Of a stretch of DNA of 64,000 bases, positions 1,323 through 2,382 are shown in pieces (the stretch's first letter is position 1; each line of letters begins with the position of its first letter). The position numbers and the translations under genes were made by a program. Origin of the DNA: Eukaryota sp. TZLM1-RC (Eukaryota > Protista > Metamonada: BaSk clade); the NCBI GenBank assembly GCA_040285825.1, contig JAUPSS010000006.1, positions 1,302,001-1,366,000 of the forward strand, read 5' to 3'. The notes under the pieces were generated by a model, which was given only the letters and a program-made list of their open reading frames with translations, was not told the DNA's origin and searched no databases.

Positions 1323-2382
1323 ATGACTAGAGACTATTACGAAGTACTTGGCATCTCTCGTAATGCTTCCGAAGACGACATTAAAAAAGCTTATAGAAAG
1401 CTTGCCATCCGATACCATCCGGATAAGAATCCTGATAACACTGAAGAAGCGCAGAAAAAGTTTGTCGAAATCACAGAGGCCTTTGATGTCCTCAAAGATC
1501 CGGAAAAGCGTCAAATCTACGACAAATATGGACATGCAGGACTCAAAGGTGGTGTACACGATGGTTCTTCAGGAACTCCTTTCTCTGGTTACTCTTTCAA
1601 CCCTGATTCTGTTTTTTCTATCTTTGAAGAGTTCTTTGGGGGTGCATCACCTTTCTCGTCATTCTTTTCTGACTCTACACCGTTTTCCGCATTCAGTAGG
1701 ACTGGTGGATTTGAATCAATGGGAGGATTTGGTCAACGCCAGCAACCACAGGTTTGATTTTTCTTTCTTATCTAACTATAGGTATTGTTTATTTGTGTCT
1801 AAGTGTTACTAACCCCAGGATTTCAGTCATGAAGTCACTGTTGAACTAATAGATTTATTATACGGAAAATCAAAGAACGTTAAAATCTCGGGTTTAACCA
1901 GATACAGAGCTGATGGTTCTTACTATACTCAAGACAAAACTTTCCGAGTGGAGATTAAACCTGGTTATAAGGATGGAAGCAAGATTCGATATAAGGGTGA
2001 AGGACCACAACAACTCAATTCACCTCCCTCTGATATTGTTTTCATTGTCAAGGTATGTAAAAGTATTTTTAAACCAAACTTACAGTAGGTTAAGCCAAAC
2101 CCCTTGTTCTCTCGTGATGGTGACAATCTACGTACGAAAGTGCATATTCCGCTATCCACTGCTCTGTGTGGTGGGGTGGCTGTGGTTCCCACCTTGGACG
2201 GCCGTCAGCTTCATGTTTCCCTTAATGATATAATTGAACCAGGAAGTGAGAGGGTGGTGCAAGGAGAAGGTCTGCCAAATGTCAGGACGGGAGTGAGGGG
2301 AGCTTTGGTGGTGGAAATTGTCGTTGATTTCCCAAAGTTTTTAAGTGATAGGCAGAAGGATTTGATCAGGCAGGCACTCTGA
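1323..2382 (+). CDS. dnaJ: Class II DnaJ/Hsp40 co-chaperone (DNAJB/Sis1-like), about 318 aa; exons 1323-1751, 1819-2052, 2089-2382
   Basis: J domain with HPD (RYHPDKNP), G/F-rich linker, no zinc finger. Splicing gives a continuous C-terminal domain: QPQ|[23 protein letters not shown]...[16 protein letters not shown]...DIVFIVK|[14 protein letters not shown]...LIRQAL*. Confidence 0.95.
1752..1818 (+). other. DnaJ intron 1, composed of two abutting mini-introns (1752-1781 and 1782-1818)
   Basis: GTTTGA...TCTAACTATAG is followed directly by GTATTG...ACTAACCCCAG; removing all 67 nt restores the DnaJ frame. Confidence 0.85.
2053..2088 (+). other. DnaJ intron, 36 nt
   Basis: GTATGT...ACTTACAGTAG; retention gives an in-frame TAG; removal gives IVK|VKPNP. 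Confidence 0.9.

What the first reader, a model, noticed from the sequence alone, without database searches (positions are those of the whole stretch)
1752..1818. Two back-to-back introns with a zero-nucleotide exon in DnaJ (recursive-splicing-like)
Seen: the 67 nt that must be removed consist of a complete 30 nt intron (GTTTGA...TCTAAC TATAG) immediately followed by a complete 37 nt intron (GTATTG...ACTAAC CCCAG). Each has its own branch point and matches the size of the 36 nt downstream intron. Removing only the first leaves GTA TTG TTT ATT TGT GTC TAA (stop); removing only the second leaves GTT TGA (stop). Established: AG|GT ratchet points are known from very long animal introns. Inference: two-step splicing in a tiny-intron genome, possibly imposed by an intron length limit.
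Basis: partly seen in the sequence, partly recalled or inferred. Interest (0 to 1): 0.8.

Follow-up and report, generated by a model that had tools for sequence, protein, structure and literature searches.

The report
Two abutting mini-introns in DnaJ gene
In a chaperone gene of the soda-lake flagellate Skoliomonas litria, a 67-base gap is made of two complete tiny introns (30 and 37 bases) with no exon between them; both are missing in two sister species, and the gap is probably cut out in two steps, but no RNA data could be checked.

Summary
Observation confirmed. The window is Skoliomonas litria DNA. The deposited DnaJ model (P9112_010358) removes exactly 1752-1818, and two sister species have no intron there and no room for extra residues. 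The 67 nt split into unit A (1752-1781) and unit B (1782-1818). Each starts with GT and ends with the genus-type branch A seven bases from an AG. Such an internal junction arises in 0.1-0.7% of shuffles. Removing either unit alone leaves a stop codon. Best reading (0.62): two abutting introns removed one after the other, probably A first, both gained on the S. litria branch at one AG|G site. A single 67-nt cut is not excluded: no sequencing runs were listed, B's donor lacks the +5 G of all eight reference introns, and the site cannot be conserved because relatives lack the intron. The proposed intron length limit is untested, and unchecked scan notes argue against it. Zero-length exons are known from long animal introns and yeast snoRNA host genes; I found no report of minimal-size units in a coding gene. 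The scan noted four similar cases elsewhere in this genome (unchecked). New variant of a known kind; interest 0.5.

The parts
1323..1751 (+). Exon 1 of a DnaJ/Hsp40 gene of class-B layout (J domain plus G/F-rich region), 143 codons, ends CAG
   Evidence: Pfam PF00226 E 6e-29; deposited model P9112_010358
1752..1781 (+). Unit A: 30-nt intron-like unit, donor GTTTGA, 57% T, branch A at 1775, AG end
1772..1785 (+). Internal junction: branch motif, AG at 1780-1781 and GT at 1782-1783 with no exon base between them
1782..1818 (+). Unit B: 37-nt intron-like unit, donor GTATTG (no G at +5), branch A at 1812, AG end
1743..1751 (+). Last 9 nt of exon 1, matching the last 9 nt of unit B at 7/9 and of unit A at 6/9: possible target-site duplication from intron birth (post hoc)
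1819..2052 (+). Exon 2, 78 codons, first half of the DnaJ C-terminal domain
   Evidence: PF01556 positions 2-71
2053..2088 (+). Ordinary 36-nt intron, donor GTATGT, tandem AG end with the distal AG used; also absent from both sister species
2089..2382 (+). Exon 3, 97 codons plus stop, second half of the DnaJ C-terminal domain
   Evidence: PF01556 positions 72-152

Best explanation
The 67 nt are a compound intron of two abutting spliceosomal introns, removed by two successive splicing reactions that leave no exon base between them. SHOWN: the 67 nt must leave the mRNA exactly; each half has this genus's intron size and 3' signal; removing one half alone gives a stop; the two sister species have no intron here. 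INFERRED: the spliceosome pairs the consensus-like donor at 1752 with the first branch and AG it meets (1775/1781), at a normal distance of 30 nt. It cuts out A and joins exon 1 to 1782. This makes CAG|GTATTG, which then serves as the donor for B. The two units cannot be loaded at once, because A's 3' exon is B's donor and B's 5' exon is A's branch and acceptor (general spliceosome geometry, own knowledge). B-first is also productive but less likely. Origin (inferred, weaker): two separate intron gains at the same AG|G site on the S. litria branch, perhaps by break repair with a short target duplication. The second insertion fell on the exon-intron border of the first. The layout is more likely a tolerated by-product of frequent intron gain than an adaptation.
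For: Only mapping of the deposited 318-aa protein. Orthologues read PQ-DF and PA-DV or PD-DV across the junction, with no extra residues. Both units share YTNAY-N3-AG with the eight reference introns of 28-36 nt. The internal junction appears in 0.1-0.65% of shuffles. The internal acceptor is as good as the outer one, so it should be used; if B could not then be removed the product would carry a stop, and this was the only S. litria protein returned by the search (inference from selection). The species tree (RCL,(GEM-RC,litria)) with absence in both relatives favours gain. Unit interiors are no more alike than shuffles (P 0.55), which fits separate origins. Exon-end/intron-end similarity 7/9 for B (P about 0.01, post hoc). 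Unchecked: four other gaps of 58-93 nt in this genome are said to split the same way.
Against: No RNA evidence at all; the mature mRNA would be identical for one or two steps. B's donor lacks the +5 G found in 8 of 8 reference donors, although that set was partly chosen by this donor pattern. No conservation can be invoked. The genome-wide number of long introns is unknown, so a few chance cases are possible. Both GEM-RC copies are entirely intron-free and could be processed copies, which weakens them as evidence for gain. Unchecked notes of much longer introns suggest a 67-nt single cut is feasible.
Confidence: 0.62

Rival explanations
1. One ordinary 67-nt intron removed in a single reaction (donor 1752, branch 1812, acceptor 1818). 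The internal signal is chance, or a silent relic of two introns that once were separate.
For: The outer signals are complete and keep the frame. B's donor is off-consensus at +5. Longer introns reportedly exist in this genome (unchecked). The motif occurs at background rate in the window as a whole.
Against: Pure chance is 0.1-0.65% per such intron. A full branch-N3-AG at a normal distance from a good donor would have to be ignored, and the region has no stable fold that would hide it (z +0.83).
Confidence: 0.24
2. Mixed or regulated splicing: productive mRNA comes mainly from the single 67-nt cut, while removal of A alone is a dead end that keeps B, introduces a stop and lowers DnaJ output (possibly stress-dependent).
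For: A looks like a stronger intron than B. A-only removal gives a stop after six codons. Hsp40 genes are often stress-regulated (own knowledge).
Against: No RNA data. A lineage-specific, unconserved site is a poor candidate for regulation. B still has GT, a perfect branch and near-normal size.
Confidence: 0.09
3. A 15-nt micro-exon (1782-1796, VLFIC) lies between intron A and a 22-nt intron 1797-1818.
For: It is the only other two-intron solution with donor 1752 that keeps the frame open.
Against: It would insert five mostly hydrophobic residues where three orthologues have none. The donor GTCTAA matches no reference donor, and 22 nt is below all reference lengths. The deposited model lacks it.
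Confidence: 0.03
4. Assembly artefact (local duplication of an intron).
For: The assemblies use nanopore reads, and the GEM-RC orthologue shows frameshift-like breaks.
Against: A and B differ in length and sequence and are no more alike than unrelated introns. The S. litria assembly has 206x Illumina coverage.
Confidence: 0.02

Closest known systems
Recursive splicing at zero-nucleotide exons (ratchet points) in long introns of Drosophila and vertebrates (review PMC5126111)
   Same: A 3' splice site directly followed by a 5' splice site (YAG|GT); no base enters the mRNA; the first step regenerates a donor.
   Different: Those sites divide introns of many kilobases and are conserved. Here the whole gap is 67 nt, both halves are of the smallest normal size, the site is species-specific, and no intermediate has been shown.
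Zero-length exons in yeasts: S. pombe SPNCRNA.445, 336-nt intron (10.1101/226894); Candida parapsilosis and Debaryomyces hansenii snoRNA clusters (PMC5033589)
   Same: Unicellular eukaryote with short introns; abutting introns with exon size zero.
   Different: Those are non-coding snoRNA host transcripts, where cutting releases snoRNAs and the S. pombe site is conserved. Here it is a protein-coding gene where the frame must be exact, the units hold no known RNA, and they look recently gained.
Fungal stwintrons and other complex intervening sequences (PMC6616335, PMC7138796)
   Same: Several short U2 introns in one gap of a coding gene, removed by consecutive reactions under intron definition.
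   Different: In stwintrons one intron is nested in another, in the strict sense inside one of its splice signals, which forces an inside-out order. Here nothing is nested; these authors class abutting introns as the other type, removed by recursive splicing.
Metamonad introns with branch point fused to the 3' splice site: Giardia, Trichomonas, Spironucleus (PMC6679479)
   Same: Fixed branch-to-AG distance.
   Different: Spacing here is branch A at -7 with a loose consensus; that paper does not mention recursive splicing.
Nested or merged Introner elements in Micromonas (PMC3879977)
   Same: New introns landing in or against other new introns.
   Different: Introners are repeat families; no second copy of A or B was found in 258 kb searched.

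Membership tests
Recursive splicing (zero-nucleotide exon) | Branch point and 3' splice site immediately followed by a 5' splice site inside an intervening sequence | tested here: met
   Branch A 1775, AG 1780-1781, GT 1782-1783; 0.1-0.65% in shuffles; donor lacks +5 G
Recursive splicing (zero-nucleotide exon) | No base from the site is kept in the mature mRNA | tested here: met
   Deposited model and three orthologues; indirect, no reads seen
Recursive splicing (zero-nucleotide exon) | RNA intermediate joining the upstream exon to the internal site, and separate lariats | not testable with these tools
   No sequencing runs listed
Recursive splicing (zero-nucleotide exon) | 5'-to-3' order, the first step regenerating the donor | not testable with these tools
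   Both orders are productive on sequence; A-first is inferred from signal strength
Recursive splicing, animal type | Located in a very long intron | tested here: not met
   The gap is 67 nt
Recursive splicing, animal and S. pombe type | Internal site conserved in related species | tested here: not met
   GEM-RC (two copies) and TZLM3-RCL have no intron at this position
Stwintron | Internal intron nested in another intron, interrupting its donor, branch or acceptor so that order is forced | tested here: not met
   Both units have intact signals side by side
snoRNA-host abutting introns | Units carry snoRNAs in a non-coding host | tested here: not met
   Coding gene; no Rfam match at E up to 1 in 1200-2500; units are 30-37 nt
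Introner elements | Many near-identical intron copies across the genome | tested here: inconclusive
   None in 258 kb, partly redundant and partly from other species; the genome is 31.9 Mb
Intron gain by break repair or target duplication (PMC3443670) | Short direct repeat at the two intron borders of a lineage-specific intron | tested here: inconclusive
   7/9 match for B and 6/9 for A against 0-5/9 in nine other introns; post hoc P about 0.01 and 0.08

The most novel reading that the evidence does not exclude
S. litria has a genome-wide class of compound introns made of two or three minimal-size units in coding genes. They are built by repeated intron gain at existing exon-intron borders and must be removed stepwise, so recursive splicing arises as a direct by-product of intron birth rather than as a solution to intron length.
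Probability: 0.35. Interest if true: 0.75.

Novelty: new variant of a known kind. Interest (0 to 1): 0.5.

Why it matters
If shown in RNA, it would be a very compact natural case of stepwise removal across a zero-length exon, in a coding gene of a lineage far from animals and fungi. It would show that such sites need neither long introns nor conservation, and that they can originate when a new intron lands on an existing AG|GT border, a natural proto-splice site. That ties two open questions, how introns are gained and how recursive sites arise, to one culturable organism with existing RNA-seq. In practice, annotation files record such pairs as one double-length intron, so intron counts, gain rates and length distributions in tiny-intron genomes may be miscounted.

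Tried and rejected
RNA test: the look-up of sequencing runs listed no run for 1300-2420, so read laying could not be used; 'none listed' is not 'none exists'. Exons were joined only inside local scripts to check frames. The full-length S. litria protein came back as a database hit to a sister-species query. Metagenome scan with exon 2: three distant DnaJ loci, best segments 40-44% over most of the exon and 64% over part, none a close relative. Walking the contig for more S. litria introns gave only three (repeat-rich region). The genome paper's main text gives no intron statistics and no supplement is held. Rejected: 15-nt micro-exon; stwintron nesting; tandem duplication of one intron (interior similarity P 0.55); masking by RNA structure; snoRNA cargo. 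The DnaJ gene tree did not resolve the three species, so the published species tree was used. The synteny check gave only scattered short hits and was uninformative. Several automatic intron solutions were ambiguous and were dropped. The reference set was partly selected by donor and branch pattern, so it is partly circular; only two of its introns are fixed by protein sequence. The big protein search was not used. Two mammalian-looking DNAJB6 proteins from the hit list were included once in an early alignment and not used further; no contig taken for human was fetched.

Full report
Identity. The window matches contig JAUPSS010000006.1 of assembly GCA_040285825.1 (12,382 of 12,382 bases identical in the overlap). 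This is Eukaryota sp. TZLM1-RC, that is Skoliomonas litria, a free-living metamonad. The gene at 1323-2382 encodes a 318-aa Hsp40 with a J domain, a G/F-rich region and a C-terminal domain, and no zinc-finger domain.

Observation. Unit A is 1752-1781 (30 nt), unit B is 1782-1818 (37 nt), and the next intron is 2053-2088 (36 nt). Each has a branch-type A seven bases from its end. Removing A alone or B alone leaves an in-frame stop. The deposited protein P9112_010358 maps to the DNA in one way only, with 1752-1818 and 2053-2088 removed. That model comes from a pipeline trained on and validated with RNA-seq, which is indirect support for the outer junction only.

Orthologues. TZLM3-RCL (71% identical) reads PQ-DF across the junction. 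The two GEM-RC copies (the longer one 69% identical) read PA-DV and PD-DV, and a transcript-derived EukProt protein has no insertion there either. This fixes the junction and excludes the only other open two-intron solution with this donor, a 15-nt micro-exon followed by a 22-nt intron. Neither sister species has an intron at this position or at 2053. TZLM3-RCL has a different 28-nt intron in the J domain, and both GEM-RC copies are intron-free. With the published tree (RCL,(GEM-RC,litria)), gain on the S. litria branch is the simplest history. The GEM-RC copies could be processed copies, so loss is not excluded.

Is the internal junction more than chance? I derived eight reference introns from the three species using annotated gene spans and product lengths. 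They are 28-36 nt, have donors GTTTGT, GTATGT or GTATGA, and all end in YTNAY-N3-AG. This set is small and partly circular. Both units fit the 3' pattern. A's donor fits the reference pattern; B's donor GTATTG matches four bases and lacks the G at +5. Shuffling the inner 50 nt of the gap gives a branch-N3-AG followed by GT, at a place that leaves two units of 24-43 nt, in 0.2-0.65% of cases, and in 0.1-0.2% with GT[A/T]T. At window scale the motif occurs at background rate, so the signal lies in its position. The number of long introns in the genome is unknown; with several hundred of them a few chance cases would be expected.

Mechanism. Shown: the 67 nt must leave exactly, and each half has the anatomy of a normal intron of this genus. 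Inferred: in organisms with short introns, splice sites pair across the shortest intron (stated for fungi in PMC6616335), and in metamonads the acceptor is set by distance from the branch point (PMC6679479). The donor at 1752 should therefore meet the branch and AG at 1775/1781 first. No stable fold hides them. Cutting A joins exon 1 to 1782 and puts B's weaker donor behind an exonic CAG, after which B can be removed. The two units overlap in the space the spliceosome needs, so they must be handled in turn (own knowledge). If B could not be removed, use of the internal acceptor would waste transcripts of what appears to be the only S. litria copy, and selection should have removed that acceptor. 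I put two-step removal as a main route at 0.62, a single 67-nt cut with an inert internal site at 0.24, single cut plus dead-end A removal at 0.09, micro-exon at 0.03 and artefact at 0.02. All productive routes give the same mRNA, so only intermediates or lariats can decide (PMC4712674). No run was listed.

Length limit. A 47-nt candidate in TZLM3-RCL and unchecked scan notes on introns of about 120 nt and 204-222 nt in S. litria argue against a hard ceiling. Shortest-first recognition suffices.

Origin. The interiors of A and B are no more alike than shuffles (P 0.55), so there is no sign that one is a copy of the other, and neither recurs in the 258 kb searched. The last nine bases of exon 1 match the end of B at 7/9 and the end of A at 6/9, against 0-5/9 for nine other introns. 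TZLM3-RCL has almost the same exon end, so the exonic copy is the older one. This fits intron birth by insertion with a short target duplication at an AG|G proto-splice site (PMC3443670), happening twice, the second time at the exon-intron border of the first. The test was made after seeing the pattern (P about 0.01 for B, 0.08 for A), so it is a lead only.

Comparison. It looks like a recursive-splicing site, but membership is unproven because the defining RNA intermediate could not be tested, and it lacks the long intron and conservation of the animal cases. Zero-length exons are also known in S. pombe, Candida and Debaryomyces, in non-coding snoRNA host transcripts. It is not a stwintron. 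In nine literature searches of an open-access library I found no report of abutting introns of about 30 nt in a coding gene, nor any study of Skoliomonas introns; the library is incomplete. The scan has noted the same layout elsewhere in this genome: CDK7 61 nt, CCP6 62 nt, a 58-nt pair and a 93-nt triple. I could not check these, and they are not independent proof.

Limits of method. The spliced model was searched exon by exon by reference; the joined search step was left out. Read laying was not used for lack of runs.

Verdict. A real feature, probably two abutting mini-introns, and a new variant of a known kind. Interest 0.5; it would rise to about 0.75 if RNA intermediates and genome-wide enrichment are shown.

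Noticed in passing
window 2053-2088: The 36-nt intron ends in tandem AGs (2084-2085 and 2087-2088). The deposited model uses the distal one, seven bases from the branch A; the proximal one would put a TAG stop in frame.
   Followed up: yes
L005 10100-10127; L001 10001-10954; L002 10001-10849: No intron position in this DnaJ gene is shared among the three Skoliomonas species, which points to fast intron turnover. GEM-RC has two near-identical intron-free copies on different contigs, both with truncated or split models that look like single-base assembly errors.
   Followed up: partly
L010 7446-8636 (minus strand): An S. litria glycosyltransferase-8-like gene has three introns of 34, 31 and 34 nt, all with donor GTTTGT preceded by an exonic G and with branch A at -7 (inferred from product length).
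   Followed up: partly
L005 3638-5523 (minus strand): A TZLM3-RCL WD40 gene has a candidate 32-nt intron with a good donor and branch motif that ends in AT rather than AG; the solution for this gene was ambiguous.
   Followed up: no
window 5413-11293, 17444-19074, 62333-63604: Several near-identical copies of an orphan gene family, three of them in tandem with a period of about 1.8 kb, some with frameshifts; no Pfam match for the first copy.
   Followed up: no
window 2921-3814, 15215-15637, 29644-30408, 44500-44892, 48221-49424, 53999-55057, 56027-60739: Many fragments resembling non-LTR retrotransposon proteins (reverse transcriptase-like and Cys/His motifs followed by a restriction-like endonuclease-type region), some in facing pairs; only one was supported by a Pfam RVT_1 hit, the rest by eye.
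   Followed up: no
window about 34000-43300: Low-GC (28-29%), skewed region in which short matches recur about every 1,030 bases, suggesting a tandem array.
   Followed up: no
window 26964-28940, 32214-33930, 45209-46291, 51550-53268: Four copies of a gene with a P-loop-like motif, intact only at 51550-53268.
   Followed up: no
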